A stretch of 64,000 nt of DNA from Macrostomum lignano. Taxonomy: Eukaryota. The stretch lies in NCBI GenBank assembly GCA_002269645.1, contig NIVC01001744.1, forward strand, positions 1-64,000, read 5' to 3'. Every line of letters starts with the position of its first letter. Within the stretch, counting starts at the first letter, position 1. Positions 5,001 through 49,196 of the stretch are shown here, piece after piece. The translations under genes were made by a program, and so were the position numbers. Below the pieces are notes generated by a model. It worked only from the letters and a program-made list of their open reading frames with translations. It was not told the origin of the DNA and searched no databases.

Positions 5001-6862
5001 GTGCTTTGGCTGGTGTTTCCGACGAAGCAGTCCGACGACTGAACATTCCCTGGCAGTCTGACCATGGGTTATCGATTAAATGGAACAGCGCATGAACCGG
5101 AAATGTCCCACAAAGAGCTCCGAATCTAGAGACAATACGCATTACAGATGATATCAAATCTGAGTGGTAGAAGACAGAGTATCCTTCGAGCACTGCTTGT
5201 GTGAGGTCCTTCATACCTCTGAGTTGAGCTGTTACATCACCTGAACAGCTGAGGATCCCTGCACCTCTCAGAAATAGACCTACAATTCTTGACTCAAGTT
5301 TCGCTTTAGCAAGTGCTTCGTCAGCCAGCTTAGCTGACTTGCTAGCCTGGCGTAGCAGCAACCTGTCTCTCGGTGACTGTGAGAACGCAATGTGAATCGA
5401 GTTGTTCAGATCGGCCGAGTCAACTATCAGCTTTAGCCGGGCTTCTTCTTGTGTTAAAAAAGATCGAAAATTTTCATTACTTTCCAAGGCAGACTCTTCA
5501 TTTTCTACCAAGAGTAACAGCAAGCGCAGCTCTTGGTCAGGATCTTTTTCTTCTGAAATTTCCAGTACGAGCTCAGTTTGACGGCTCTGCAGTGACTCAA
5601 TGTCATGCTCATTGCGTTGAGACTTCTGTAGAGCTAGCCACAGCGCCGAAGCAGCAAGAAAAAGTTTTGTAGTGAGAGCGATTGAAGGATCGAATGTTGC
5701 TTCGACCACAGACTTAGGCTGATTTATCTTCAGATTGTGCATCATTCTTTCGATACTTGCAATTCCTGTCGCCACGTAGGAAGCTACAAATCCTGTCTGA
5801 GGCGTCGCTGCCAACTCCTCCCACAACTGCAGTCTCTTCTTGGACTCAAGCTTAGAGCATGTGAGACACACAGGTCTGAACTCGTGACAGGCTCCTGCGA
5901 CAAGGAAGCATTTTCGTTCGGATAAATCTTTCTCGGCACTGCATACCACACAACGAGCACCGAGGAAAAACTTCTTTATACCCCTTCTCTCTCTATTAAC
6001 GTCGACGCGAAACTTGGGTAACACATCTTTGAGTCTTTGGCGCATCTTTTCGGGGTCGCTTGACAGTGGCTTGGAGCCAGATGGAGGAATCAATATCACC
6101 ATGAGTTTTCTCAATTCGCTTTCCTTCAAGCTGGAAAGGTCATAGCAGCATACTAGTTCGCCTTCTTGAACTGGTGGAACTTTCGTCTGCGTATTCCTTT
6201 TCAGCGTTTTTTCTAGCGTCTCTCTCGCCCATTTGCAGGCTTCGGTGAGAACTTCATCGTCTAAATGTTCTTCTGAAAGCTCGCCTGACGCGATACTCTC
6301 AATAAAAACCGGGCTTTGCAGAGTTGACCGTCTCGTCCTCTTAATAACCCGTAGCTTCTCCTGAAGATCCAGAACTGCTTGACGAGTTTCCTCGAAAAAC
6401 TTATTTGCGAATCCGTTTGGGTCGCATTGCGCTCCATGAGCCGTCTCGGAACTCTCCCTCCAAGCAGCGATTCTGCTCATGAGGTCCTTCGATAGTGTCT
6501 TTCCAGTTGGCAATCGAGGCAAATCAGCGCCACTCTCGTAATCCTCAGTTGCTTCATCTCGACGTTCGTCGTACTTCATTCGTTCGGTTTTATCGCACAG
6601 GACAGATTTGGCTTGATTCAGAAGCTTGGCCATGTCTTCAGCCTCGCTGCCAGCCTTGTCGGGATGATAGTTCGTCATTCGCTTGCGCCAAGCTCTCAGA
6701 ATTTCCGCCTCGGAAGCAGCTTGCGTCACACCCAGTAGCTGGCAAAAAATTGTTATTGTGAATATTATTATGGCTAATATTGCGTCATTAATACAACTGA
6801 GACTTAGTGGTGTTAAAAAAGTCACTCACCGAGTAGAAACTTGGTAAATCTGAGTTGGCCAT
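2099..6862 (-). CDS. Large J-domain (DnaJ) multidomain protein: J-domain, Cys-rich cluster, helical region, DUF1598-like region, putative toxin-like C-terminal tip
   Basis: Exon 1 6862-6830 (MANSDLPSFYS), GTGAGT..CAG intron 6829-6739, then LLGVTQAASEAEILRAWRKRMTNYHPDK (HPD motif). A long exon runs to a probable donor at 2929/2928, or reads through to a stop at 2701. Further exons ~2806-2495 and 2392-2099 join in phase 0 via a GTAAGA..AAG intron (2494-2393). The 2928-2807 junction is uncertain. Confidence 0.8.
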
Positions 6863-7920: not shown

Positions 7921-10900
7921 ATGGCTCAGTCAATGGAGTACCGTCTTGGTGAGATGCCACTTTCTTACCCAGAGATAGAACAATACTTCAAACGACTTCT
8001 GTTCTACCTGGAGGCAACTGAAAAGAATGAGCAAGCTAAAGCAGTCCTACTGGCTACCTGCGGTGAATCTGCATTCAATCTGGTGGAGGAGCTGATAAAA
8101 CCAGAAGACATCACCAAGGCCGGTGTTACGTTCAAGTCGATTCAGGACACTTTGCTCGAGCACTTCAAACCGAAAGCTCTGCTTCATTATGAGCGACATG
8201 TGTTCCATTCTACTGTTCAAAAGGACGCGGAGAGCATTACAAATTTCGTTGCACGGCTCAAGCAACAGGCGAACAAGTGCCAATATGGTGAATTGCGCGA
8301 AGACCTGATCCTGTCTCAGTTTATCTTCGGACTTCGTAGTCAGAATCTGCGGCAAAAACTGCTATCCAAAGGCACGCTTGAGCTTAATGATGCTATTCAA
8401 GAGGGACTCATGACCGAGTCAATTGCAACTGCTACAGACAAGCCGGAAACTATCGCTAATGTGCAGAATGCTGGGACATTCTCGAGACCAAGAAGCTGCA
8501 GTGCCCAACGCTCTGTCTCATTCAAGCAACCTCAGGGACATCTGCATAATCAGTCGAGCGGCAAACCTAAAGGTAAAACAGCTAAGTGTCACACCTGTGG
8601 GAAATCGGGACATCTACGATCAGCATGCAGGTTCCAAGAAGCCAAGTGCCATAAATGCGGCAAGGTAGGACATCTAGCTACCGTGTGCAGATCAAAGGCT
8701 ATGAACGCAATCCAACGAATGCCAAGCTGCAGCCCTTCACCAGGGAACACTAGCTCTTACCATCTGGAACTCATTCATGCGGTTAGACAGCCAAAAACGG
8801 GTTGCTCAGATCAGTGGTTTGTTCGGTGTCGTCTAGGAAAAACTGAAGTCAACATGCTTGTGGACACCGGCAGCCAAGTAACCGTGGTTCCGGATCAAAT
8901 CGCCAAGAGCTCAGGCTTAGAGTTACAGCCAGTCAGCCAAAAACTAAGATCTTACGGAGGTTTTCAAGCTACGGTCACTTCTGTCATCTACGGGGCAAAG
9001 CTACAGGTTATTGGTGGCAAGTCTGCTTCAGAAAACATCTACGTCGGTCATGATACAACAGCTATTCTGGGCATGAACTTCATACCGTCCCTAGACCTAG
9101 TGCGAATGGATCAAGCGGTTCGAGTGTCGAATGAACACAAGTGCCTACCAGTCGTCCGAGATCAAAACTCAAACTTCATTGCCAGCTTTCGCTTACGTTC
9201 GGGTGTGAGTATGGAAGGCATGCGATTTCCTGCTCGCTCACTTCCTTTCTCCATGAAGTCTATGGTAGAAACCGAACTAAGAAGACTTCTTGCTTCAGGA
9301 ATCATCTATTCAGTCAAGAATCCTACTGTTGCAGCGCCAATAGTCCCAGTGGTCAAGCCCGAGGGATTAGTAAGACCTATTCGACTGTGTGGCGACTACT
9401 CTATGACGCTCAATCGTCTTATTGACGTGGACAAGTACAGGTTTCCGAAGATGGAGGAGATCCTGGCTAAGATTCCCAACGCTAAATTCTATACGGTCCT
9501 AGACTTAGAACAGGCCTTCTTACAGGTGGCTCTATCCCCTGAGAGCCAAGAGCTCACATGCATTTCTACTCACATGGGATTCTTTGCATTCAGATATCTA
9601 CAATTCGGGATTTCCGCGGCGCCTCTAATATTTCAGGAAATCATGGACGAAGTTCTTCGGGATGTACCATTTACAGCCTCATATCAGGATGACATCATTA
9701 TTGGGACTCCTGAGGATTCAGCCGAAAAACACATGCAGCTGGTTCGTCAAGTCAAGGATCGTTTGGCAAACTGCGGGTTCAAGATTAACCAGAGAAAGTC
9801 TCAAGAATGTCGTAGAGAAGTTCGATTTCTTGGCTTCATTTTGCGCGATGGAGGCATGCACCCCGACCCAGCACGAATGGAGGCGTGGAAGAGGTTACCA
9901 TATCCAAAAGACAAAGACCAACTGCGCAGCGCTCTGTGCACCTTCCGACACAATGGCGTCTTCTGCAAGAACTTTTCAATGATTGCACGACCGTTATATC
10001 AGCTGCTGAAGAAAGGAGTTCACTGGAGTTGGCATGGAGAGCAGTCTGCGGCATTCGACAAGCTGAAGAGCATTATTGCAGGCGGTGTGATAACCGCATA
10101 CGACATTACGAAACCGTTGTACTTGATTTGTGACGCCTCTAAGGATGGCCTCGGGTACGTTCTAGCTCATGATCCAATGCAACGACAGGTTGTCTGGCTA
10201 GGCAGCCGAGTCCTGACTCCAGCGGAGAGCAACTACGCTAACATTGAGCGGGAGGCGTTAGCGATCGTCGAAGGGACCAGATACTTTTATCAGTACCTCG
10301 CGGGTCGAAAATTTACCATCATTTCTGATCACCGACCGCTTCAGTACATATTTAATCCGAACAAGGTCTCCGAGCGAGTTTCAGCAAGGATTCAGCGATG
10401 GGCATTACTGTTAAGAGCTTACGATTACAATGTGATGTACGTCAAGGGTGAAACGATGTACGCTGCAGACACTTTGTCTAGACTTCCATTGCAGTCGGAT
10501 TCAGCGGATCAGAAGATCAACCTCTTAGAAATCAATGCACTGGAGGGTTTCGGAAACCCCGAACAGCTACTGCAGAGGATCGTGCGAACTAAAGATTACA
10601 AGTTGGACATGCTCAAGAAGTACATTCAAGACGGCTGGCCTGCTTATCCACCACCAGCTATGCTGCCATATTCACGCAATAAGTTGGAATACACACTCCA
10701 AAACGGAGTGATTTTCAAAGGATTGCGCATCGTCCCACCCTCTAGCCTGAGAAGCGAAATTCTTCAGATGCTTCACGAGGACCACCCCGGCATCGTGAGG
10801 ATGCTACGTCTATCCAGACAGTACTTCTGGTGGCCCGACATAGATGCTCAAATCAATGCATTCGTTCAACGTTGTGTTCAATGCCAGCTACATGCTAGGA

Positions 10901-11778
10901 AAAGAAGCAATGCAAATCTGTCGTCATGGCCGGAGACAAAAAGTTTCTTCGAGAGAGTTCACGTTGACATCGCTACTTTCAAAGGTCAACGCTTCCTTGT
11001 CCTGATTGACGCATTTTCAAAATGGGTAGATGTACAGTCCGTGCCGTCAATGAAAGCATCCATTGTCATCAGTGCGCTGAGAAAAACGTTCAAGTATACC
11101 GGATTGCCGAAAAATCTGGTTTCGGACAATGGTGGAACTTTTGTGGCAGAAGATTTCGTTACTTTCCTGCGAGAGAACTACATCGACCACACACTTACTC
11201 CCCCAGGACATCATCAGTCCAACGGTCAGGTGGAGAGAGTCATTGAAGAATTGAAGTTTTATTTAAGAAAGTTAAACGCTGGTGCCAATCTTTCTGAGCT
11301 GGAAAGGCATTTAGCAGGATTCTGCCTGTTTCAGAATACGACTCCTCACTGCAATGGATCAATTCCGGCACTTCTGGTGTTTCAGCAGTCGCCCCGAACA
11401 CGTCTATCAGCCATTTGTACAGAGAGGACGAGGCCGGTTCAAGAGCCAGTTCCTGTTTTCGTGCGTGTGGAGCACAAGGAGCAACGGGTCCCCTCTGAGC
11501 TGAAGTCTACAGTTGGTACAAATACTTTCCGAGACGCAGAAGGACGACTAGTGCACCAGTCCGATGCTACTGCTCGTACAGAGGAACTACCGATTGATGA
11601 TTCGAAGCAGTCTGGGATCACCCCTCGTGATACTGATGCAACTACGTGCCAAGACAGTGCTACCACAAGTCCAATGCGCCATGCAATGCAGTCGCCTAGG
11701 CACAAGGAACACGGTGTGCTCGAGTTCCGTAGGAGCACGCGAGTCAGGCGACCTCCGGAACGATTAACTTATTTCTGA
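7921..11778 (+). CDS. Gag-Pol polyprotein, 1285 aa, uninterrupted
   Basis: Two CCHC knuckles (CHTCGKSGHLRSAC, CHKCGKVGHLATVC), protease LVDTGS, RT YQDD, RNase H (CDAS/EREALA/SDHRPL), integrase HHCC and D,D(35)E. Order PR-RT-RH-IN defines Gypsy. Confidence 0.98.
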   Translation: MAQSMEYRLGEMPLSYPEIEQYFKRLLFYLEATEKNEQAKAVLLATCGESAFNLVEELIKPEDITKAGVTFKSIQDTLLEHFKPKALLHYERHVFHSTVQKDAESITNFVARLKQQANKCQYGELREDLILSQFIFGLRSQNLRQKLLSKGTLELNDAIQEGLMTESIATATDKPETIANVQNAGTFSRPRSCSAQRSVSFKQPQGHLHNQSSGKPKGKTAKCHTCGKSGHLRSACRFQEAKCHKCGKVGHLATVCRSKAMNAIQRMPSCSPSPGNTSSYHLELIHAVRQPKTGCSDQWFVRCRLGKTEVNMLVDTGSQVTVVPDQIAKSSGLELQPVSQKLRSYGGFQATVTSVIYGAKLQVIGGKSASENIYVGHDTTAILGMNFIPSLDLVRMDQAVRVSNEHKCLPVVRDQNSNFIASFRLRSGVSMEGMRFPARSLPFSMKSMVETELRRLLASGIIYSVKNPTVAAPIVPVVKPEGLVRPIRLCGDYSMTLNRLIDVDKYRFPKMEEILAKIPNAKFYTVLDLEQAFLQVALSPESQELTCISTHMGFFAFRYLQFGISAAPLIFQEIMDEVLRDVPFTASYQDDIIIGTPEDSAEKHMQLVRQVKDRLANCGFKINQRKSQECRREVRFLGFILRDGGMHPDPARMEAWKRLPYPKDKDQLRSALCTFRHNGVFCKNFSMIARPLYQLLKKGVHWSWHGEQSAAFDKLKSIIAGGVITAYDITKPLYLICDASKDGLGYVLAHDPMQRQVVWLGSRVLTPAESNYANIEREALAIVEGTRYFYQYLAGRKFTIISDHRPLQYIFNPNKVSERVSARIQRWALLLRAYDYNVMYVKGETMYAADTLSRLPLQSDSADQKINLLEINALEGFGNPEQLLQRIVRTKDYKLDMLKKYIQDGWPAYPPPAMLPYSRNKLEYTLQNGVIFKGLRIVPPSSLRSEILQMLHEDHPGIVRMLRLSRQYFWWPDIDAQINAFVQRCVQCQLHARKRSNANLSSWPETKSFFERVHVDIATFKGQRFLVLIDAFSKWVDVQSVPSMKASIVISALRKTFKYTGLPKNLVSDNGGTFVAEDFVTFLRENYIDHTLTPPGHHQSNGQVERVIEELKFYLRKLNAGANLSELERHLAGFCLFQNTTPHCNGSIPALLVFQQSPRTRLSAICTERTRPVQEPVPVFVRVEHKEQRVPSELKSTVGTNTFRDAEGRLVHQSDATARTEELPIDDSKQSGITPRDTDATTCQDSATTSPMRHAMQSPRHKEHGVLEFRRSTRVRRPPERLTYF

Positions 11779-17577: not shown

Positions 17578-17984
17578 ATACTACTAATAAGTAGAATGCT
17601 GCAATTATTAGAAAAAGCAAAGTAGATCTTAAAGAATATATATATATTATATATATCTAGTATTAAGAAAGTTATGACCCTCTAATCTTGGTAATGCTCA
17701 AGAGCTAGATGATCAAATACTGAGATTACTGAGAGATATTTACAAGATTTATTCTAAGAAATATATGCAAGGAATTCTAGGCATATAATAAAATCAAATA
17801 AAGTATATAAAAAGTAGGAACACTATCAGTATAAAGTAAGAAAAACTCGGACTAATATTCTAACTTATCTTTAGAAATTAATTATAGTCTTGTAATAACA
17901 AAATTTGGAGCCAGCAGTAGATATTTCAGAGACCCCAGCATAGTAAAACATAAAATGGCATTTAAATGTATTTCAGACAATATA

Positions 17985-19538
17985 ATGTCCTTACTTGAGA
18001 CCTATGAGCAGCAGTTTGGCATAACAACAGCCGAGATAACTAGTAAAATTAACCAGATTAGTCACCTATCAAGTACAGGTGAGGTCACTTTACATAAATA
18101 AATAAGATATATTGTCTGCTATTCTTGTGTCCAAAAATCAATAACTTACTATTTTTGTGTATCTATAGATGACCGAGTGACCACTATTAGCCAAGCAGAG
18201 CGACTGTTTGCCGAGGCCAAGGAGACCCTGGAACAGCTGGAGCTGGAGATACGAAGCCAGCCACCATCGCTCAGGCAGAAGTACACTACCCGGCTGCAGA
18301 GCTATTCCGCCGAGCACAAGAAACTGGAGGTGGATTTTCGTCGGGCTAGGTAAATGGGGCCCACACCCTACTCACTGATCCTCTGGGTGCTGCCGCTCTA
18401 CTCACAGATCCTCCCGATCTCCCAGATCCCAGTTTGACCCATCAATCCTCCCAGAACACTATTGGTTTCCCAATGGTTCCAGATCTCCATATTAATCTCC
18501 AAATCCTCTCAGATCCCTATCTTAATCTCCAATCTTCTCGAATCCCTATCTTGATCCCACAACTCTCCCTGACCCCTAATCCTCTCAGATCCCCAATCTT
18601 AATCTCCAATCCTCCCAGATCCCCATCTTGGTTTCCCAATCCTCCCAGATCCCCATCTTAGTTTCCCAATCCTCCCAGATCCCCATCTTGGTTTCCCAAT
18701 CCTCCTAGATCCCCATTTTGGTTTCCCAATCCTCCTAGATCCCCATTTTGGTTTCCCAATCCTCCCAGATCCTCATCTTGGTTTCCCAATCCTCCCAGAT
18801 CCCCATCTTAGTTTCCCAATCCTCCCAGATCCCCATCTTGGTTTCCCAATCCTCCTCGATCCCCATTTTGGTTTCCCAATCCTCCTAGATCCCCATTTTG
18901 GTTTCCCAATCCTCCCAGATCCCCATCTTCGTTTCCCAATCCTCCCAGATCCTCATCTTGGTTTCCCAATCCTCTCAGATCCCCATCTTGGTTTCCCAAT
19001 CCTCCCAGGTCTTCATCTTGATCCCTCGCCACTCCTAGAGCTCATCTGGGTTACGAATCCTCCCAGATCCACTGATTTATCTCGAATCCTCATTTGAACT
19101 GCCAGAGAGGCCGGCCAGGCCAAGCGGGATCGAGACGAGCTTCTGTCGGAGGCCGAACAGTCGCTGCAGCATCGCCACGACGAGCTGGCCTCCGACTACC
19201 GCACCCGCCTGCTGGACAATACCGAACGTCTCGAACGTGCCGGTCGTCGTATCGACGAAGGCCTTGGCAGTGTTGAAACAACTCAACAAGTTGGCCGGAC
19301 CATTCTGGCCGATCTGGCCGGACAGCGGGAGACGCTGGAGCGCGGCCGAGACCGGCTACGCGGCGCCGATAGGGATCTGGGCGCCAGCAGTCGGATACTG
19401 AGCGGCATGCTGCGCAGGGTGGTGCAGAATCGGGCTCTGCTGCTGCTCATACTGGCCGTTGTGCTCATTGTTATTGGCCTGGCTGTTTACACCGTGGCCA
19501 GGGCCAACTTGTCTGGGCGGACGGCCGCGGCCGGATGA
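17985..19538 (+). CDS. vti1a: Vesicle transport through interaction with t-SNAREs 1A (Qb-SNARE), 235 aa
   Basis: join(17985..18078,18169..18349,19106..19538), 708 nt, GT-AG introns in phase. MSLLETYEQQFGITTAEITSKI...RTRLLDNTERLER...QRETLER...SSRILSGMLRRVVQNR followed by a TM helix. Confidence 0.95.
18590..19020. repeat. 30-bp tandem repeat CCTCCCAGATCCCCATCTTGGTTTCCCAAT in vti1a intron 2
   Basis: Direct inspection, ~13 copies. Confidence 0.95.
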
Positions 19539-19980
19539 ATGGAGAAAGTCGGGATCCAGAGGGCTCTGAAGCGGTCTCTGGGATCTGTTGCTAGGATTTG
19601 GGATTTCCCAGGATCACTTGTTAGGATTGGCCCTAAATATTCGGAAAAGTTCTGAAATTCAATGTGTCACTGCGGTTCACTATCTGATTTCTATCTGTAA
19701 TATCTGGCTGGGGCCATCGGCGACATCGTGTCGCTGAGGCAATTCCGCCCATTCGACTCAGGCATGTACACTCTCTGTGCCTTGGGGGTTGGACCTCATG
19801 GGTAATGGGTGTGAACAAGCCCCAAATGAATGGCACGGAATCGAAGCAGGGGTCCTGGTACGAGAGTCAGGCGCGTTTACTGGTGAGCTGCTGCGTTCCC
19901 CTCCCCCTCGAAATCTGGGATTATAACAGATTCTGATTTAGGGATCTTATAATACAATAGGAATCTCATTTTCATTAGGG

Positions 19981-24350: not shown

Positions 24351-24545
24351 TAGTCTCTAGTAGTATCCTGAGAAAGTATACTGAGAAAATATTTCTTGCA
24401 TGGGGGCTATAGGTTTTATTGTCTGAATCTAAATTACATTTTGGAATTTAAGATCCATAGTCAGGATGCCATACAGAAAATAGAAAATCTAAGATAACAT
24501 TGTCAGCTTAAACTGATCCGATTTCATGTTTCTCTACTGCTGAAG

Positions 24546-27500
24546 CAGCAGCCGCAACCTGGAGGGCATCGTCAAGCAGCTGCTGGTTGGGCAGCCGGCG
24601 GTCTGTCTGACAGACCTGTCGGTGCCTTACGGCCCGTCGGGGCGTCACCGGCTCTCAGTTTACCTGGTCAATATTAAACGGCTTCTAAATCCGACATTTA
24701 AATCCGCTTGTCAGGTTGCCGGCATTCCGGCACAGGATTTGGTGCACGCTCTCGCCGCGCTGTACGATGTTGCTCTGGGCTCCATGGAGACTGAGATTAT
24801 CTATTCGACTGTGTCTGGGGATAATACCTACAGTTTGGTTGCTGTGCGAGAGCCTGAGGAGGCTTTGGCAGCGGCTGAGGCGCGGGCAGAGAGAGCTCTG
24901 GCTGCTGAGAGGAAAAAATTGCAGAAACAGCAGGAGGAGAGGTAAGGGCTGAGCTGGGATATCTGCTGGCTATCTAGCTTGGGGATCAATGGGATATCTG
25001 CTGGCTATCTAGCTTGGGGATCAATGGGATATCTGCTGGCTATCTAGCTTGGGGATCAATGGGATATCTGCTGGCTATCTAGCTTGGGGATCAATGGGAT
25101 ATCTGCTGGCTATCTAGCTTGGGGATCAATGGGATATCTGCCGGCTATCTAGCTTGGGGATCAATGGGATATCTGCCGGCTATCTAGCTTGGGAATCAAT
25201 GGGATATCTGCCGGCTATCTAGCTTGGGAATCAATGGGATATCTGCCGGCTATCTAGCTTGGGGATCAATGGGATATCTGCCGGCTATCTAGCTTGGGGA
25301 TGTGAATGATCAATGGGATATCTGCCAGCTATCTAGCTTGGGGATTAATTGGATATCTGCTGGCTATCTAGCTTGGGAATCAATGGGATATCTGCCGGCT
25401 ATCTAGCTTGGGGATCAATGGGATATCTGCCGGCTATCTAGCTTGGGGATCAATGGGATATCTGCTGGCTATCTAGCTTGGGGATCAATGGGATATCTGC
25501 TGGCTATCTAGCTTGGGATCAATGGGATATCTGCCGGCTATCTAGCTTGGGGATCAATGGGATATCTGCTGGCTATCTAGCTTGGGGATCAATGGGATAT
25601 CTGCTGGCTATCTAGCTTGGGGATCAATGGGATATCTGCCGGCTATCTAGCTTGGGGATCAATGGGATATCTGCTGGCTATCTAGCTTGGGGATCAATGG
25701 ATATCTGCCGGCTATCTAGCTTAAGGATCAATGGGATATCTGCTGGCTATCTAGCTTGGGGATGTGAATGATCAATGGGATATCTGCCAGCTATCTAGCT
25801 TGGGGATTTATTGGATATCTGCCGGCTATCTAGCTTGGGGATTAATTGGATATCTGCCGGCTATCTAGCTTGGGGATCAATGGGATATCTGCCAGCTATC
25901 TAGCTTGGGAATCAATGGGATATCTGCCGGCTATCTAGCTTGGGGATCAATGGGATATCTGCCGGCTATCTAGCTTGGGGATGTGAATGATCAATGGGAT
26001 ATCTGCCAGCTATCTAGCTTGGGGATTAATTGGATATCTGCTGGCTATCTAGCTTGGGAATCAATGGGATATCTGCCGGCTATCTAGCTTGGGGATCAAT
26101 GGGATATCTGCCGGCTATCTAGCTTGGGGATCAATGGGATATCTGCTGGCTATCTAGCTTGGGGGATCAATGGGATATCTGCTGGCTATCTAGCTTGGGG
26201 ATCAATGGGATATCTGCCGGCTATCTAGCTTGGGGATCAATGGGATATCTGCTGGCTATCTAGCTTGGGGATCAATGGGATATCTGCCGGCTATCTAGCT
26301 TAAGGATCAATGGGATATCTGCTGGCTATCTAGCTTGGGGATGTGAATGATCAATGGGATATCTGCCAGCTATCTAGCTTGGGGATTTATTGGATATCTG
26401 CCGGCTATCTAGCTTGGGGATTAATTGGATATCTGCCGGCTATCTAGCTTGGGGATCAATGGGATATCTGCCAGCTATCTAGCTTGGGGATTAATTGGAT
26501 ATCTGCCGGCTATCTAGCTTGGGGATCAATGGGATATCTGCCGGCTATCTAGCTTGGGGATCAATGGGATATCTGCCGGCTATCTAGCTTGGGGATCAAT
26601 GGGATATCTGCCTGCTATCTAGCTTGGGGATCAATGGGATATCTGCCGGCTATCTAGCTTGGGGATCAATGGGATATCTGCCGGCTATCTAGCTTGGGGA
26701 TCAATGGGATATCTGCCGGCTATCTAGCTTGGGATGCGAATGATCAATGGGATATCTGCTGGCTATCTAGCTTTCGGATGTGAATGATCAATGGGATATC
26801 TACTGGCTATCTAGCTTGGGGATGTGAAGGATCAACGGGATATCTACTGGCTATCTAGCTGGGGGATGTGAAGGATCAACGGGATATCTACTGGCTATCT
26901 AGCTGGGGGATGTGAAGGATCAATGGGATATCTACTGGCTATCTAGCTGGGGGATGTGAAGGATCAACGGCATATCTACTGGCTATCTAGCTGGGGGATG
27001 TGAAGGATCAATGGGATATCTATTGCTTCAGAGTAGCTTGTGTGTCCGAGTACCTGCCCATGTTGCACCACTCCGTCCGTGAAACTGCCTGATTAATAGT
27101 TCGGCATCTGGCGACCCGGCGGGCGAGCCTCAGCCAATCGGAGAGGCCCTGGCGCAGGCTCGCAAGGCCCTGTACGTGCCGCTGTTAGCAAAGTACACTC
27201 CGCCAGACGAGGCCGAGCTGGACCACTTTGAGCCAGAGCCGGAGCGAACCTCCGACTTTGTGCAGTTCTACTCGTCTGATGAGGACGGCGAGACCGGTGG
27301 CGACGGCGACGGCGAATGGGAAGATGAGGACGACGATGATGATGAAGATGATTTCTCAGTCGGTTATCGCGGCTTCATCCGGCGGCAGCTGGAATCGCGA
27401 ATTCAATTTGAGGCTCGAGCGGCTGATCGGATAAAGGCGGCTGACGGTGAGCTGGGCGGATGCCTCATCAGCATGGCTAGAGCGGATCTGAGCAGCCTTG

Positions 27501-30232
27501 ATCAACTAATGACCAACACGCTCCGCCCACCCCGAAACCCGAAAGTACACGCTCGACTCACTCTAAAAGTACACTCCTGCTCAAGCCAGAAGTACACACC
27601 TACCCTTACTCGCCCGAATGCACACAGCTATTCGTCCAAAAGTACACCCCACTGTCCACTGGCTTCGAAAGTACACAGTCAAACTCGATGGCCAACAGCC
27701 CAACATGTACATTGCGCAAGCACCAACCAACTCGAAACAACACCAACCAACTCGAAACAACACCAACCAACTCCAAGCAACACCAACCAACTCCAAGCAA
27801 CACCAACCAACTCGAAACAACACCAACCAACTCCAACCAACTCCAACCAACTCCAACGAACTCCAAGCAACACCAACCAACTCCTACCAACCCCAACCAA
27901 CTCCAAGCAACACCAACCAACTCGAAACAACACCAACCAACTCCAACCAGGGGCCACAGAAGGCGCACCAGAAAGCTCAACCAATGAAGCCAAAGCCGCC
28001 AACCCCGCCGTTGTGGATCGGCTCGCGGGGGCGGCCACCTTCGATTTGAAAACTGTGGAGGGCGAGCGCGTCGTCCACCTGGTCTTCCTGGCCGTCCGAT
28101 CTCGGTTCCGCCGGGCTGGCCTGGGCAGCGCCCTGCTCCGCAGCCTCAAGGATCCCGCCATCGTGGGCCGCCACTCCGCTGTGGTTGTCCACGCCGATCC
28201 CGACGCCGTGTCCTTCTTCGCCCGCTGGGGCTTCATCACCGACCCTGTGATGAACGAGAAATGGAAAGAGTTCGCTGATCAGTTCTATAACTGCACTATC
28301 ATGTCCTACCACCCGCCCTGGTCCGCCTTCGCGCCCGATCACCCGGCCCTGCCCTACTCGCCTCGGCTCGATGCCAAGGAGATGGAACGGCAGTTCTTCG
28401 CTAATCGGGCTCAGCAGGTGAGGCAATGGATTTCTTTGATGCGCCGCTCCCTCCCTGATCCTTTGATGTGCCGCTATACCTCCCCGGTCCTTTGATGTGC
28501 CGCTGTAACTCCCCGATCCTTTGATGTGCCGCTGTAACTCCCCGATCCTTTGATGTGCCGCTATAACTCATATCCTTTGATGTGCCGGTATACCTCCCCG
28601 ATCCTTTGATGTGCCGCTATACCTCCCCGATCCTTTGATGTGCCGCTGTAACTCCCCGATCCTTTGATGTGCCGGTATACCTCCCCGATCCTTTGATGTG
28701 CCGGTATACCTCCCCGATCCTTTGATGTGCCGGTATACCTCCCCGATCCTTTGATGTGCCGCTATACCTCCCCGATCCTTTGATGTGCCGCTGTAACTCA
28801 TATCCTTTGATGTGCCGCTATACCTCCCCGATCTAAGTATCGTTGCCGCCACTAACTAACCCAGGCGTTTTCAGTGCTTATCTATATAATCCGATGCGTA
28901 ACTCGCACTCATCCATCCCCAACTTGCATGTGTCAGGTTAAGTCTCTAAACTCCCAAACAATTCTATTCGAACGAATGCGCCACGAGCTGGCCCACCTCC
29001 GCCTGCTGGTGCAGTCCAGGGACGACCTGATTCGCTCGCTCACCGAGCAGCTGCGCTTAGCGACTGGAGTCGGTGCCGAAGGCGGCGAGGCAGCTGACGG
29101 GCCTCAGAAGGCGGCTTCTCTGTCGGACGCGCCAGAGAGCGCCGCCACCGTAGAAAAAACCGATCCGGCTGTTCCAGCGCGCTGGCGCCAAGCTGCCGCG
29201 CGAATTGAGCGCGGTCTGAACTCCGATCCTCGGGCGCCGAATGGTCGGCACCGGGTCATTGCGGTGCGCGAACCCGCGACCGCTCTGTCCGAGTTGTGGC
29301 GCCATCAGCAGCAGCACGCGCAGTGCATCCAGCTGTACCTGTGCGGACCGCGGCGGGCCGAGGCCTGCGAGGCTCTGCTAGAGCGCGGATTCACCGGTGC
29401 TGAGCACATGGAGCAGGTAGGGCCACCTTGCCTGCCCTCTCTGACCCTTCTCTAGCCGTGTAAAGGAGTTACAGATATTGTAAATAATAATTGATTACCT
29501 GCCCTATTGGGCAGATGGCAACCGACAGCTCAGCCGCAGCTATTGCGCGGCGCATCTGAAGGCTGCGTACGGCTGTTCAGTCCAAGGACTGGGGAGTCGC
29601 CACACACCCTAAATTACCCCAGCTAATGCTGGCAGACATTTTACAGCTGGGTGAACCGAAGCAATGCAGAGTTAAGTGTCAGTGTCAGAGTGGGACCGGG
29701 AATCGAACCCCCGACCTTCACGTCGTGAGTCCGACGTTCTAACCACTAGGCTACAACCAACCTATATAAATAATAAGTAGATTTGCGTGTAAACTACTTG
29801 CAGTTCAGTAGAAAGTAAACAAGAAGCATTTTAATGTGTTTTTACGCTCGTCGGCAAAAGTCGCTTATTTTAGTAAGACTTAAATTTTAGGCGACGTAAA
29901 ATCGATTAACTTTAACTTTTAAAAATGCAACACTTTGCCAGGGCGCATTCGGCTTAGGCTTCTATTTGAGTCCCTCGCCGCTCACGGCTGCCCTGTACGC
30001 TCCATCCGGGATGCTGCTCCTGGTCTGGGCGGCCCTCGGCGCCACCGAGACCGTCGTGTCGCCCTGCCGCGGCCGCGCCGGCCCCTCGGCCGGCTACCAG
30101 TCGCTGCTGTGTCCTGGCCGTTCGGCTTACAAAGGCGACGATAACTTGGCTAGGGAATACCTGGTGTTTGATCCCAGGCAGCTGTCGCCCTGTCTGCTAG
30201 TGCTGTACAAAGACGATGCTGGTGATGAATGA
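24546..30232 (+). CDS. GCN5-like GNAT acetyltransferase + coiled coil + PARP-like ADP-ribosyltransferase domain protein (5' end not located)
   Basis: Exons ~24546-24941, 27100-27446, 27951-28417, 28937-29416, 29942-30232; all GT-AG and phase-compatible (>650 aa). GNAT motifs: RRAGLG and HADPDAVSFFARWGF. PARP-like motifs: GAFGLGFYLS and EYLVFDPRQLSPCLLVLY. Confidence 0.85.
24955..27020. repeat. 35-bp satellite GGGATATCTGCCGGCTATCTAGCTTGGGGATCAAT filling an intron
   Basis: ~55-60 copies beginning just after the donor at 24942. Confidence 0.97.
27721..27950. repeat. 20-bp repeat CACCAACCAACTCCAAGCAA abutting the splice acceptor
   Basis: Direct inspection; 10-bp subunits. Confidence 0.9.
28457..28832. 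repeat. 29-bp intronic repeat GATCCTTTGATGTGCCGCTATACCTCCCC
   Basis: ~13 copies. Confidence 0.95.
29485..29757 (-). mobile_element. tRNA-derived SINE in an intron
   Basis: Minus strand has Pol III box A (TAGCCTAGTGGTT) and box B (GGTTCGATTCC), a body containing CACCCAGCTGTAAAATG, and an ATT-like tail; the cloverleaf does not close. Confidence 0.75.
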
Positions 30233-35537: not shown

Positions 35538-37889
35538 TTACAATAGTTGGCACTCGCGCTTCTGTCTCCGAACTGGCCGGCGAGGGACCAGGACAAGGCG
35601 AATGGCTTCGTCGAAGACTGATTTCACCTCGGACTGCAGCTTGGATGAGCACTCCAGGTAGGCCGCTGCCTGAACCTCCTTGGCCAGAGCCAGGCCCTGG
35701 GAGACGGTTACGGATGCATGCGTCTGTGTTTATCTGCATTTAGATACCGGTAGAGGATGGAGGAGATAGGGGAAGGGGAGAAGAAAAATAGGAGATTAGA
35801 AAATGAGAGAGTAGAGGAGAGTATGAGAGACTAGGTGCGGGTGGTAGGAAGAGAGTAGATGGGAGGATGAGAGGGTAGAATATGAGAATAGATGGGAGGA
35901 TGAGAGGGTAGAATATGAGAGTAGATGGGATGATGAGAGTAGATGAGAGGATGAGAGGATGAGAGAGTAGATGATGACAGTAGATGGGATGATGAGAGTA
36001 GATGAAAGGCTGAGAGAGTAAATGATGATAGTAGATGGGAGGATGAGAGAGTAGAGGGTGAGAGTAGATGGGATGATGAGAGTAGATGGGATGATGAGAG
36101 TAAATGAGAGGATGAGAGGATGAGAGAGTAGATGATGACAGTAGATGGGATGATGAGAGTAGATAGATGGGATGATGAGAGTGGATGGGGATGATGAGAG
36201 AGTAGAGTATGAGAGAAGACTGGGAGGAAGGATGGGAGAATAGAGAGGGAAAAGATGATTGGTTAGTGAGCAAAGAAGGCGGACAAAATGGAGCTGGGTA
36301 GCGGGGCGATGGGGCGCAGTAGCTGCGCTAATGACAATCAAAATGCAAATGGAGTTGAGCCGCGGTCAGCCTCACCCGGCTCCAGAGCTCACCTTCTCAG
36401 TAGAGACTGGCGCCTTGCCCTTGGCCCTCAGTCTCTCAATTGTGTCGGGGTCTTCGCGCAAATCTCGCTTGGTGCCAACTAGCAGGATTGGCGCTTCCGG
36501 TGCGTAGTGCCGCACTTCCGGTACCCATTTTGAGCGGACATTGTCGCAACTGACCGGGTTTTCGAGCGAGAAGCAGACGATCATGACGTCAGTCTGAGGA
36601 TAGCTCAGAATGCGCAGCTGGTCGTATTCCTCCTGGCCTGGCGGGGCGGATGGGGGAGGGAGAGGGCGGATTGAAGAGGAGCGAGAGGGCGGATTGAAGA
36701 GGAGGGAGGGAGCGGATTAAAAAGAAGAAGGGAGTGGATTGAAGAGGAAAGGAGCGGATTGAAGAGGGAGGGAGTGAGCGGATTGAAGAGGGAGGGAGTG
36801 AGCGGATTGAAAAGAAGAAGGGAGTGGATTGAAGAGGAAAGGAGCGGATTGAAGAGGGAGGGAGTGAGCGGATTGAAGAGGGAGGGAGTGAGCGGATTGA
36901 AGAGGAAAGGAGCGGATTGAAGAGGGAGGGAGGGAGCAGATTGAAGAGGGAGGGAGGGAGCGGATTGAAGAGGGAGGGAGGGAGCGGATTAAAAATAAGA
37001 AGGGAGTGGATTGAAGAGGAAGGGAGCGGATTGAAGAGGGAGGGAGGGAGCGGATTGGAGAGGGAGGGAGGGAGCGGATTAAAAAGAAGAAGGGAGTGGA
37101 TTGAAGAGGAAGGGAGCGGATTGAAGAGGAAGGGAGCGGATTGAAGTGGGAGGGAGGGAGCAGATTGAAGAGGGAGGGAGGGAGCGGATTGAAGAGGGAG
37201 GGAGGGAGCGGATTGAAGAGGGAGGGAGGGAGGGAGCGGATTGAAGAGGAAAGGAGCGGATTGAAGAGGAAGGGAGCGGATTGAAGTGGGAGGGAGGGAG
37301 CAGATTGAAGAGGGAGGGAGGGAGCGGATTGAAGAGGGAGGGAGGGAGCGGATTGAAGAGGGAGGGAGGAGGGAGCGGATTGAAGAGGAAAGGAGCGGAT
37401 TGAAGAGGGAGGGAGGGAGCGGATTGAAGAGGGAGGGAGGGAGCGGATTGAAGAGGGAGGGAGGGAGGGAGCGGATTGAAGAGGAAAGGAGCGGATTGAA
37501 GAGGGAGGCAGGGAGCGGATTGAAGAGGGAGGGAGGGAGGGAGCGGATTGAAGAGGAAAGGAGCGGATTGAAGAGGGAGGCAGGGAGCAGATTGAAGAGG
37601 AAGGGAGCGGATTGAAGAGGAAGGGAGCGGATTGAAGAGGAAGGGAGCGGATTGAAGAGGAAGGGAGCGGATTGAAGAGCGGGGCTAACACAGACTGAAT
37701 AAGCGACCCACCGGCGGTGTCCCACAGGCACAAATTGATGGACTTCTGCTGCACCATCACGTTGGCACTGTAGGTGTCGAACACTGTGGGTATGTACTCT
37801 TCAGGGAACTGGTTGGTTGCGTAAGAGATCAGCAGGCAGGTCTTGCCCACAGCACCGTCGCCAACCACCACGCACTTAATCGATTGCAT
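35538..37889 (-). CDS. Rac/RhoG(Mtl)-like Rho-family small GTPase, 193 aa
   Basis: complement(join(35538..35696,36393..36637,37712..37889)), 582 nt. [32 protein letters not shown], polybasic tail and CAAX box CQLL. An upstream acceptor TTTTTCAG lies near 37905. Confidence 0.96.
35745..36260. repeat. GA-rich degenerate repeat (GATGAGAGTAGATGG-like) in GTPase intron 2
   Basis: Direct inspection. Confidence 0.85.
36650..37680. repeat. GGATTGAAGAGGGAGGGAGGGAGC-type repeat filling GTPase intron 1
   Basis: Variable 20-28-bp units. Confidence 0.93.

Positions 37890-40427: not shown

Positions 40428-49196
<8,769 letters not shown>

What the first reader, a model, noticed from the sequence alone, without database searches (positions are those of the whole stretch)
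24546..30232. GCN5-like acetyltransferase fused to a PARP-like domain, both with altered catalytic residues
Seen: LAALYDVALGSMETEIIYSTV..YSLVAVR, then ~190 aa of coiled-coil and acidic insert. The rest of the fold follows: AGAATF..VVHLVFLAV..RRAGLG..HADPDAVSFFARWGF..NCTIM, which parallels the GCN5/PCAF HAT domain. A coiled coil and a PARP-like domain come next. Established: GCN5 uses the Glu of AEIVFCA as general base, and PARPs use an H-Y-E triad. Here the GNAT Glu position is His (28076-28078). The PARP His position (LFHG) reads YLCG, i.e. Cys (29342-29344), while Tyr (29963) and Glu (30155) are kept. Inference: one protein coupling acetylation and ADP-ribosylation, or a pseudoenzyme reader. 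I know of no characterised protein with this architecture.
Basis: partly seen in the sequence, partly recalled or inferred. Interest (0 to 1): 0.75.

Follow-up and report, generated by a model that had tools for sequence, protein, structure and literature searches.

The report
Split GCN5-like acetyltransferase fused to PARP-like domain
This is a real five-exon gene of the flatworm Macrostomum lignano, belonging to an old, widespread and unstudied animal protein family that joins a GCN5-type acetyltransferase domain to a PARP-type domain, each lacking a residue that the textbook enzymes need.

Summary
On the + strand, five GT-AG exons (about 24546/24562-24941, 27100-27446, 27951-28417, 28937-29416, 29942-30232) encode about 659 aa, 98.9% identical to an annotated M. 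lignano protein from a syntenic second copy. The architecture has four parts:
- a GCN5/PCAF-type GNAT domain, split between strands beta2 and beta3 by an acidic insert of about 165 aa;
- a 57-residue helix, probably a coiled coil;
- a disordered linker;
- a C-terminal PARP catalytic-fold domain.

This is not a one-off. Full-length relatives occur in cnidarians, molluscs, annelids, nemerteans, echinoderms, amphioxus, shark, coelacanth, frogs and a unicellular holozoan. Every one I looked up is labelled uncharacterised.

The altered residues are family traits. The GCN5 base position is mostly Gln or His. The PARP His position is Cys or another small residue, never His. Tyr and Glu are kept.

The two M. 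lignano copies give dN/dS of about 0.10.

No function has been tested. My reading is that the GNAT module binds acetyl-CoA and is the core. The PARP-like module is an accessory with a non-canonical nucleotide pocket.

The parts
24546..24941 (+). First recognisable coding exon. It holds the N-terminal third of the GNAT fold (beta1, alpha1-alpha2 'LVHALAALYDVALG', beta2 'YSLVAVR') and the start of the insert helix. The 5' boundary is uncertain. An in-frame stop lies at 24541-24543, the annotated paralogue starts at 24562, and the first in-frame ATG is only at 24784.
   Evidence: All 7 differences from the sister copy in this exon are synonymous. It aligns to tGCN5 residues 16-60 in the insert-deleted profile.
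24942..27099 (+). Intron 1 (GT..AG), filled with 35-bp and 44-bp minisatellites.
27100..27446 (+). Exon 2. It encodes the acidic, largely disordered insert of the GNAT domain ('FVQFYSSDEDGE...DEDDDDDEDDFSVGYRGFIRRQLE'). The motif F..VFSD.ES...DFS.G..F...V.ERR is conserved across the family.
   Evidence: pLDDT is below 50 at residues 169-213.
27447..27950 (+). Intron 2, 504 nt, stop-free and frame-preserving in this copy. It contains a C/A-rich 20-bp (60-bp) minisatellite at 27721-27949 that mimics a 'PTNSKQHQ' coding repeat.
   Evidence: It is spliced out in P0001. The sister copy has an in-frame stop here.
27951..28417 (+). Exon 3. It holds the GNAT core (beta3 to beta6). His290 (28076-28078) sits at the GCN5 general-base position. 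The acetyl-CoA loop RRAGLG lies at 28109-28126, followed by 'VVHADPDAVSFFARWGF' and the GCN5-type tail 'EKWKEFADQFYNCTIM'. The long helix begins at 28373.
28418..28936 (+). Intron 3 with a 29-bp minisatellite.
28937..29416 (+). Exon 4. It holds the rest of the 57-residue helix (to 29062), a disordered linker, and the first half of the PARP-like domain from about 29177. Cys539 (29342-29344, 'LYLCG') sits at the PARP His position.
29417..29941 (+). Intron 4, containing a dispersed repeat (about 29506-29680).
29942..30232 (+). Exon 5. It holds the second half of the PARP-like domain: Tyr571 (29963-29965, 'GLGFYLS'), Ala579 (29987-29989) at the position of the nicotinamide-binding Ser, Tyr582, 'GYQSLLCPGR', Glu635 (30155-30157, 'REYLVFDPRQ') and the TGA stop at 30230-30232.

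Best explanation
Shown:
- The locus is an intact, selected, single protein-coding gene of Macrostomum lignano.
- It is a member of an ancient holozoan family that nobody has characterised. NCBI names the coelacanth member after the zebrafish gene si:dkeyp-50b9.1.
- The protein has four parts: a GCN5/PCAF-type GNAT domain interrupted between beta2 and beta3 by a long acidic disordered loop, a long helix, a linker, and a domain homologous to the PARP catalytic domain.

Inferred mechanism:
- The GNAT module is the core of the protein. It probably still binds acetyl-CoA or another acyl-CoA, because the R/Q-x-x-G-x-G loop and the beta4/beta5/alpha4 motifs are almost invariant.
- If it transfers an acyl group, it does so without the GCN5 glutamate. 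The M. lignano His could act as a base, but Gln is the commonest state in the family, so that position is not a conserved base.
- The acidic loop plausibly binds basic partners such as histones.
- The helix probably dimerises the protein.
- The PARP-like module keeps the nicotinamide-stacking Tyr, the Glu and nearly the whole PARP signature. It replaces the His that holds the adenine-ribose 2'-OH with Cys or another small residue, and the Ser that holds the nicotinamide amide with Ala.
- It is therefore unlikely to be a canonical NAD+-dependent H-Y-E transferase. More likely it is an accessory nucleotide-binding or regulatory module with a constrained, altered pocket.

Weak hint only: a germline role. 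The hint is that zebrafish si:dkeyp-50b9.1 is listed among genes expressed far more in testis than in ovary.
For: Gene and splicing:
- Exons and splice sites.
- 98.9% identity to an annotated protein from a syntenic second copy.
- Exons are 97-99.7% identical between the copies, while the alignable parts of introns are 88-92% identical.
- dN/dS is 0.10, from 17 synonymous and 5 non-synonymous differences.

Split GCN5-type GNAT:
-.
- The insert-deleted family profile aligns contiguously to tGCN5 residues 16-158 of 162 at E=4.6e-13, and the top 13 hits are all GCN5/PCAF.
- The AF2 secondary-structure order matches GNAT topology with the insert after beta2.
- The same two-piece match appears in the homologues inspected individually, with gaps of about 100-310 residues.

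Cofactor loop: R/Q in 124 of 128 sequences and the second Gly in 126 of 128.

PARP homology:
-.
- 17 of 20 family members pass Pfam PF00644, best 8e-12.
- Foldseek top hits are tankyrase catalytic domains.

Pocket residues: Cys or a small residue, never His; Tyr 48/51; Glu 45/48. Ala is invariant opposite the tankyrase Ser in the 17 sequences of alignment A4.

Roles of those residues in PARP1: His862 binds the adenine-ribose 2'-OH, Tyr896 stacks on nicotinamide, Glu988 polarises the nicotinamide ribose (PMC6486540). Gly863 and Ser904 bind the carboxamide (PMC4157409).

Precedent: plant PARP3, with a Cys at the His position (C-V-E), is inactive and does not bind NAD+ (PMC6701155; PMC2964712).

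Accessory nature: long GNAT-only relatives exist in trematodes, a monogenean and a horseshoe crab.

Testis hint: bioRxiv 10.1101/650218.
Against: - No biochemical, expression or phenotype data exist for any member.
- The very strong retention of Tyr, Glu, the GxGxYF loop, DS..PGR and an invariant Ala looks more like an active or ligand-binding pocket than a decayed one. A real but unusual transferase activity is therefore not excluded.
- The GNAT module lacks the GCN5 base, so it too could be only a CoA-binding pseudoenzyme.
- The start codon was not found, and the annotated paralogue is also 5'-partial.
- Orthology to the zebrafish gene rests on NCBI's name for the coelacanth protein. I did not see the zebrafish sequence itself.
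- The testis hint is one list in one preprint.
Confidence: 0.55

Rival explanations
1. It is a true bifunctional enzyme. An active lysine (or other) acetyltransferase and an active ADP-ribosyltransferase with a new C-Y-E site sit on one dimeric polypeptide and write both marks on the same targets.
For: - The acetyl-CoA loop is conserved, and Tyr and Glu are conserved.
- The family keeps the PARP Glu that most mono-ADP-ribosyltransferases have lost (for context).
- Pocket positions are invariant rather than drifting.
- The two modules have stayed fused from a unicellular holozoan to vertebrates.
Against: - His is never present, and the nicotinamide-binding Ser is Ala in all 17 sequences of A4.
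- Substitutions of that His accompany inactivity in PARP9 and PARP13 and in plant PARP3.
- Gln, which cannot act as a base, is the commonest residue at the GCN5 base position.
- Several lineages dropped the PARP-like module and kept the rest.
Confidence: 0.17
2. It is a double pseudoenzyme. Neither domain catalyses anything, and the protein is a scaffold or reader, for example of acetyl-CoA/CoA levels or of ADP-ribose-related ligands.
For: - Both textbook catalytic positions are changed family-wide.
- The closest profile hit among PARPs includes the inactive ZAP/PARP13 domain.
Against: - The cofactor-binding motifs of both folds are among the best conserved columns.
- Many active GNATs have no Glu at this position (general knowledge of the GNAT superfamily, not tested here).
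Confidence: 0.2
3. It is a gene-model artefact or a decaying copy. Either two neighbouring genes (a GNAT gene and a PARP-like gene) were read as one, or this is a pseudogene in a repeat-rich region.
For: - No start codon was found, and the annotated paralogue is 'partial'.
- Introns are packed with minisatellites, one of which stays open in frame.
- I saw no direct RNA evidence.
Against: - The same collinear architecture appears in 41 homologues, including RefSeq models from many phyla.
- All junctions are GT-AG and in phase, with no stop across 659 codons.
- dN/dS is 0.10, and exons are better conserved than introns between the two copies.
Confidence: 0.04

Closest known systems
GCN5/PCAF (KAT2A/KAT2B) histone acetyltransferase domain, e.g. 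Tetrahymena GCN5 (PDB 1QSN, 1Q2C)
   Same: - Same GNAT sub-type. It aligns over tGCN5 residues 16-158, including alpha1-alpha2 ('L..L.N.F...LP.MP.E') and the R/Q-x-x-G-x-G loop.
- It also shares 'YADN.A..FF.K.GF' and the GCN5-specific tail 'EKWKGYIKDYDGGTLM'.
   Different: - The general-base Glu is His here, and mostly Gln or His in the family.
- An acidic loop of about 165 aa is inserted between beta2 and beta3.
- There is no bromodomain and no PCAF N-terminal domain.
- It is not an orthologue of GCN5.
Tankyrase-1/2 (PARP5a/b) catalytic domain
   Same: - Best structural match (Foldseek E 5e-8, TM 0.63) and best profile match (4e-12).
- Shared motifs are GF, GxGxYF, xEY(V/I)(V/I)(F/Y)...Q..P.YL(I/L).Y, and both Tyr and Glu of the triad.
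   Different: - His is replaced by Cys, and the nicotinamide-binding Ser by Ala.
- There are no ankyrin or SAM domains.
- The window protein alone is below Pfam's PARP threshold.
ZAP / PARP13 PARP-like domain (PDB 2X5Y, 4X52)
   Same: It is among the top profile hits over the whole domain (1.6e-12 and 7e-11). It also lacks the His and is regarded as catalytically inactive (PMC6486540).
   Different: ZAP has a Y-Y-V triad (PMC2964712, reports Val at the Glu position). This family keeps Glu, so its pocket is less degenerate.
Land-plant PARP3 (clade 1D), triad C-V-E
   Same: It is the only described PARP I found with Cys at the His position and Glu retained. It was shown to be inactive and unable to bind NAD+ (PMC2964712; PMC6701155).
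   Different: - Plant PARP3 has also lost the Tyr.
- It has BRCT/WGR/PRD domains and no GNAT.
- It is an independent lineage.
Uncharacterised animal proteins such as XP_038068410.1 (Patiria miniata), XP_014351554.1 'SI:DKEYP-50B9.1' (Latimeria), XP_031568080.1 (Actinia), and EP01137 P000504 (Pigoraptor, a unicellular holozoan)
   Same: Full-length, collinear relatives (E 1e-57 to 1e-27, 29-37% identity). They share the split GNAT, the acidic insert motif, the helix and the C/small-Y-E PARP-like domain.
   Different: The M. lignano protein is the most divergent in the PARP-like part. It has His rather than the deuterostome Gln at the GCN5 base position.

Membership tests
GCN5/PCAF (KAT2) acetyltransferases | GNAT fold of the GCN5 sub-type (motifs D, A, B plus the GCN5-type C-terminal segment) | tested here: met
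   Insert-deleted family profile against PDB gives tGCN5 at 4.6e-13 over residues 16-158, and the top 13 hits are all GCN5/PCAF. The single sequence gives 3e-4. AF2 topology agrees.
GCN5/PCAF (KAT2) acetyltransferases | Acetyl-CoA pyrophosphate loop Q/R-x-x-G-x-G/A | tested here: met
   RRAGLG at 28109-28126. In the family, R/Q occurs in 124 of 128 sequences and the last Gly in 126 of 128.
GCN5/PCAF (KAT2) acetyltransferases | General-base glutamate in strand beta4 (tGCN5 Glu122, yeast Gcn5 Glu173; numbering recalled from memory) | tested here: not met
   His at 28076-28078 aligns to the Glu of 'AEVAFLAV'. Family counts are Q 45, H 35, D 16, Y 8, E 4.
GCN5/PCAF (KAT2) acetyltransferases | C-terminal bromodomain (and the PCAF-homology N-terminal domain in animals) | tested here: not met
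   No bromodomain or PCAF_N hit in the window protein or in 20 relatives.
GCN5/PCAF (KAT2) acetyltransferases | Acetyl transfer to histone lysines | not testable with these tools
   Needs a recombinant protein assay.
PARP / ARTD family | PARP catalytic (ART) fold | tested here: met
   Foldseek of the AF2 model against PDB returns only PARP catalytic domains in the listed top 50, nearly all tankyrase, with E 5e-8, prob 1.00 and TM 0.63. The family profile gives TNKS1 4e-12 and ZAP 7e-11.
PARP / ARTD family | Sequence match to Pfam PF00644 above the curated cut-off | tested here: not met
   The window protein scores 15.6-17.3 bits against a cut-off of 26.7. Seventeen of 20 relatives match PF00644 at E<=0.01, best 8e-12.
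PARP / ARTD family | Histidine of the H-Y-E / H-Y-x signature (binds the adenine-ribose 2'-OH of NAD+) | tested here: not met
   Cys at 29342-29344 aligns to the tankyrase 'FHGS' His. Family counts are C 28, G 9, A 5, S 5, T 1, and never His.
PARP / ARTD family | Tyrosine and glutamate of the H-Y-E signature | tested here: met
   Tyr at 29963-29965 and Glu at 30155-30157. In the family, Tyr is 48/51 and Glu 45/48.
PARP / ARTD family | NAD+-dependent ADP-ribosyl transfer | not testable with these tools
   Needs NAD+ binding and transfer assays. The Ser904-equivalent is Ala, which, together with the missing His, argues against canonical binding.
Uncharacterised holozoan split-GNAT / coiled-coil / PARP-like family (si:dkeyp-50b9.1-like) | GNAT domain split by a long acidic insert between beta2 and beta3 | tested here: met
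   The two-piece match to the insert-deleted profile appears in this protein and in the homologues inspected individually.
Uncharacterised holozoan split-GNAT / coiled-coil / PARP-like family (si:dkeyp-50b9.1-like) | Collinear full-length similarity, including the conserved helix 'KSL.AYQAQ..C..R..HEI..LR' and a C-terminal PARP-like domain with a small residue, Tyr, Glu and an invariant Ala | tested here: met
   There are 26 relatives at E<=1e-30 and 41 with both domains.

The most novel reading that the evidence does not exclude
The C/small-Y-E domain may be a working nucleotide pocket of a new kind. The His that normally touches the adenine-ribose 2'-OH is replaced only by small residues. 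That could make room for a phosphorylated adenine ribose, as in NADP+ or the 3'-phospho-ADP moiety of CoA or acetyl-CoA.

On this reading, one dimeric germline protein would couple acetyl-CoA chemistry in the GNAT half to NAD(P)/CoA sensing or to an unusual ADP-ribosyl-type transfer in the PARP half. That would be a direct enzymatic link between acetylation and ADP-ribosylation, kept since before animals arose and lost in amniotes.
Probability: 0.12. Interest if true: 0.9.

Novelty: new variant of a known kind. Interest (0 to 1): 0.6.

Why it matters
Acetylation and ADP-ribosylation are two major chromatin and signalling marks, and their crosstalk is usually studied through separate enzymes. 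Here both folds sit on one polypeptide in a family that:
- is at least as old as animals;
- is present in fish, amphibians, echinoderms, molluscs and cnidarians;
- was not seen in mammals among the members I could name;
- has never been studied.

The family also carries a PARP signature (Cys or a small residue, then Tyr, then Glu) for which I found no description in the literature.

M. lignano and zebrafish both allow knock-down or knock-out and simple fertility read-outs, so the question is directly testable. If the protein turns out to be ordinary, it is still a useful correction. The 'catalytic changes' are ancestral family states, not a peculiarity of this locus.

Tried and rejected
- Word-index homology searches with the full protein, the full alignment and a low-complexity-free alignment returned almost only the M. 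lignano proteins themselves. The family was found only by the exhaustive HMMER search.
- The single-sequence PDB search with the PARP-like part found nothing.
I rely on the profile alignment and on the secondary-structure order of the full model.
- Start codon search. There is an in-frame stop at 24541-24543 and no in-frame ATG before 24784.
  - The M. lignano spliced leader ends in ATG (PMC8629364).
  - The good polypyrimidine acceptor at 24545|24546 and the CAG acceptors at 24548 and 24551 are out of frame for that ATG.
  - The only in-frame AG is at 24564|24565. It lacks the YTNCAG motif, and the annotated paralogue includes the codon before it. This is unresolved.
- No upstream exon could be recognised between the v-SNARE gene and 24546.
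- I considered the 'PTNSKQHQ' repeat as coding and rejected it.
- I searched for Mlig018772 in paper texts and in three supplement sets and found nothing.
- Literature searches for a GNAT-PARP fusion or a C-Y-E triad found nothing relevant.
- ARAGORN and Rfam found no RNA genes in or near the gene.
- No DUF3715 (TASOR/TEX15 pseudo-PARP) hit was seen in Pfam scans, only PF00644.

Full report
**Where we are.** The window is a repeat-rich eukaryotic sequence. Nearly every non-coding stretch is a 20-44 bp minisatellite. The spliced product of the finding is 94-99% identical to NCBI 'hypothetical protein BOX15_Mlig018772g2, partial [Macrostomum lignano]' (P0001). The contig that carries P0001 (NIVC01003488.1, locus L001) is collinear with the window over more than 20 kb at 92-99% identity. 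The window is therefore a second, allelic or homeologous, copy of that locus in this hidden-polyploid flatworm.

**The observation.** All quoted peptides are present in + strand frames. Reading the DNA at the junctions and comparing with P0001 gives five exons with GT-AG introns in consistent phase. They are 24546/24562-24941, 27100-27446, 27951-28417, 28937-29416 and 29942-30232 (TGA), and they encode 659 codons without a stop.

Two corrections are needed.
- The long ORF 27176-28495 reads through intron 2 (27447-27950). That intron holds a C/A-rich 20-bp minisatellite which translates as 'PTNSKQHQ' repeats. P0001 splices it out, and the sister copy has an in-frame stop there.
- The 5' end is open. 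An in-frame stop lies at 24541-24543, and the first in-frame ATG is at 24784. Yet the codons from 24562 onward are clearly translated. They align to conserved N-terminal motifs of relatives from other phyla, and all seven differences between the two copies in this exon are synonymous. The M. lignano spliced leader ends in ATG (PMC8629364), but no convincing in-frame trans-splice acceptor is present. A small upstream exon cannot be excluded.

**The GNAT half.** Pfam GNAT families match above their curated cut-offs. The best solved relative of the single sequence is Tetrahymena GCN5 (E=3e-4). That alignment includes the GCN5-type tail and places the window His opposite the catalytic Glu.

I built a family alignment and deleted the insert. 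The resulting profile aligns without a break to tGCN5 residues 16-158 of 162 at E=4.6e-13. The 13 best PDB hits are all GCN5/PCAF, and the next family (NAA30) is at 1.7e-6. The insert lies between beta2 and beta3. The secondary-structure order of the AlphaFold2 model agrees. The insert is acidic and largely disordered, but it contains a motif conserved across phyla.

**The PARP-like half.** Alone, the window sequence is only marginal against Pfam PARP (E=0.0035-0.011, below the cut-off), and it finds no PDB sequence. Three further lines settle it.
- Seventeen of 20 relatives match PF00644, best 8e-12.
- The family profile hits tankyrase-1 at 4e-12 and ZAP/PARP13 at 7e-11.
- The model (mean pLDDT 75.8, about 85-93 in the domains) has tankyrase catalytic domains as its best structural matches (E 5e-8, prob 1.00, TM 0.63).

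The residue-by-residue alignment gives these equivalences:

| This family | Tankyrase / PARP1 position |
|---|---|
| Cys | His of 'HGS' |
| Tyr | Tyr of 'YFA' |
| Ala | Ser of 'SKS' |
| Phe/Tyr | the stacking Tyr |
| Glu | Glu of 'AEYVIY' |

**The family.** An exhaustive HMMER search of 1.84 billion representatives found 180 relatives at E<=1e-3 and 26 at E<=1e-30. I looked up thirty of them, and a later search added two more. The named ones come from:
- amphioxus, a sea star, sea urchin and sea cucumber;
- gastropods, a chiton, a pearl oyster and an annelid;
- a nemertean, a sea anemone and a ctenophore;
- a sawshark, the coelacanth and two frogs;
- the unicellular holozoan Pigoraptor.

Every named one is 'uncharacterized', 'hypothetical', 'unnamed', or named by automatic domain annotation. 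The one misleading label is 'TNKS2', on an amphioxus model that is fused to a reverse transcriptase. NCBI names the coelacanth protein after the zebrafish gene si:dkeyp-50b9.1, not after a human gene. None of the members I looked up is from a mammal, bird, insect or nematode. I cannot claim absence there.

Of the 161 sequences collected, 41 carry both modules. Trematodes, a monogenean and a horseshoe crab have long forms with the split GNAT but no PARP-like domain and no replacement domain.

**Are the 'altered catalytic residues' special to this locus?** No.
- At the GCN5 base position the family reads Q 45, H 35, D 16, Y 8, E 4. His is typical of the spiralians I could name, and Gln of deuterostomes, the cnidarian, the ctenophore and Pigoraptor.
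- At the PARP His position it reads C 28, G 9, A 5, S 5, T 1, and never His. Tyr is 48/51 and Glu 45/48.
- The acetyl-CoA loop is nearly invariant.
- The Ser-to-Ala change is found in all 17 sequences of alignment A4.

**Selection.** Between the two M. lignano copies, exons are 97.3-99.7% identical while alignable intron sequence is 88-92% identical. There are 17 synonymous and 5 non-synonymous differences, so dN/dS is about 0.10. The numbers are small but the direction is clear. Both copies are maintained as coding sequence.

**How it probably works (inference).** The GNAT module keeps every cofactor-binding motif, and it is the part retained in all lineages. I therefore take it as the functional core that binds acetyl-CoA or another acyl-CoA. 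It cannot use the GCN5 mechanism as such, because Gln is the commonest residue at the base position. The His of the flatworm protein could serve as a base, but that is not a family property. The acidic loop is the kind of sequence that binds basic proteins. The 57-residue helix is a likely dimerisation element.

In PARP1, His862 binds the adenine-ribose 2'-OH, Tyr896 stacks on nicotinamide and Glu988 polarises the nicotinamide ribose. Substitutions of the His accompany inactivity of PARP9 and PARP13 (PMC6486540). Gly863 and Ser904 hold the carboxamide (PMC4157409). Plant PARP3, which has Cys at the His position, is inactive and does not bind NAD+ (PMC6701155; PMC2964712).

With both His and Ser replaced, canonical NAD+ use is unlikely. 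The replacements are themselves constrained, though: only small residues at one position and only Ala at the other. The rest of the signature, including Glu, is kept. That pattern fits a still-used pocket with altered specificity better than it fits a dead one. I therefore rank the readings in this order: (1) 'accessory, non-canonical nucleotide-binding module', (2) 'double pseudoenzyme', (3) 'true second catalytic activity'.

The only functional hint in the literature is that zebrafish si:dkeyp-50b9.1 appears in a list of genes expressed far more in testis than in ovary, next to sycp3, hormad1 and dmc1 (bioRxiv 10.1101/650218).

**Comparison with what is known.** It works like a GCN5-type GNAT joined to a PARP-type fold, but it is a member of neither family in the strict sense. 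It fails the GCN5 tests for the catalytic Glu and the bromodomain. It fails the PARP test for the His. It is a clear member of an unnamed family that exists in databases only as predicted proteins. I found no paper that describes the architecture or a C-Y-E signature.

**Verdict.**
- The locus is a bona fide member of an unstudied, ancient family.
- Novelty is 'new variant of a known kind': two well-known folds in an undescribed, conserved combination with an undescribed PARP signature.
- Interest is 0.6. It is not a new fold or a new principle on present evidence, but it is a clean, testable lead in two tractable model animals.

Noticed in passing
window 27447-27950 (repeat at 27721-27949): Intron 2 is 504 nt, a multiple of three, and has no stop in the exon frame. 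It therefore fuses with its flanking exons into one 439-aa ORF whose middle reads as 'PTNSKQHQPT' repeats. The sister copy's intron is 648 nt and has an in-frame stop, so the open frame is a side effect of C/A-rich composition, not coding.
   Followed up: yes
window 2701-6825 (-): A single uninterrupted 1374-aa ORF with an N-terminal DnaJ (J) domain (Pfam 2.6e-13) and no other recognisable domain. That is unusual for a genome whose other genes here are split by introns.
   Followed up: partly
window 7921-11778 (+): An intact 1285-aa Ty3/gypsy-type polyprotein ORF (Gag, zinc knuckle, protease, RT, RNase H, integrase). It is probably a young LTR retrotransposon copy.
   Followed up: partly
window about 17980-19540 (+): A three-exon Vti1-like v-SNARE gene lies immediately upstream of the finding. 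It matches the PF05008 gene annotated upstream of P0001 in L001.
   Followed up: partly
window 47345-49196 (-): A Maelstrom gene (HMG-box exon plus Maelstrom-domain exon, Pfam 8.5e-13), a piRNA-pathway germline factor, lies about 17 kb downstream on the other strand. It is also a neighbour in L001. I know of no functional link to the finding.
   Followed up: partly
window about 37700-37889 (-): First exon of a Rho-family small GTPase ('[23 protein letters not shown]...'). It runs into a 24-bp (44-bp) minisatellite that keeps the frame open for another 300 codons or so.
   Followed up: no
window 29506-29680; L001 9576-9752: A dispersed repeat of about 175 bp sits in intron 4 of the window copy. 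It also lies, inverted and 94% identical, just upstream of the gene in the sister locus. It looks tRNA-derived by eye, but ARAGORN and Rfam report nothing.
   Followed up: partly
window 58965-61782 (-): Two large overlapping ORFs (396 and 585 aa) with no Pfam match. One contains a 24-bp repeat coding 'HGLEPERE'. This may be an unclassified mobile element.
   Followed up: no
homologues P0029, P0034, P0046/P0159, P0032, P0041: Parasitic flatworms (three trematodes and a monogenean) and a horseshoe crab keep the split GNAT and the helix but lack the PARP-like domain. The free-living flatworm M. lignano keeps it.
   Followed up: partly
homologue P0094 (Branchiostoma lanceolatum CAH1242857.1, labelled TNKS2 / ribonuclease H): A 1199-aa amphioxus model joins a reverse-transcriptase domain to a C-terminal copy of this family's PARP-like domain. 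It is probably a gene-model fusion with a retroelement, and the name is misleading.
   Followed up: partly
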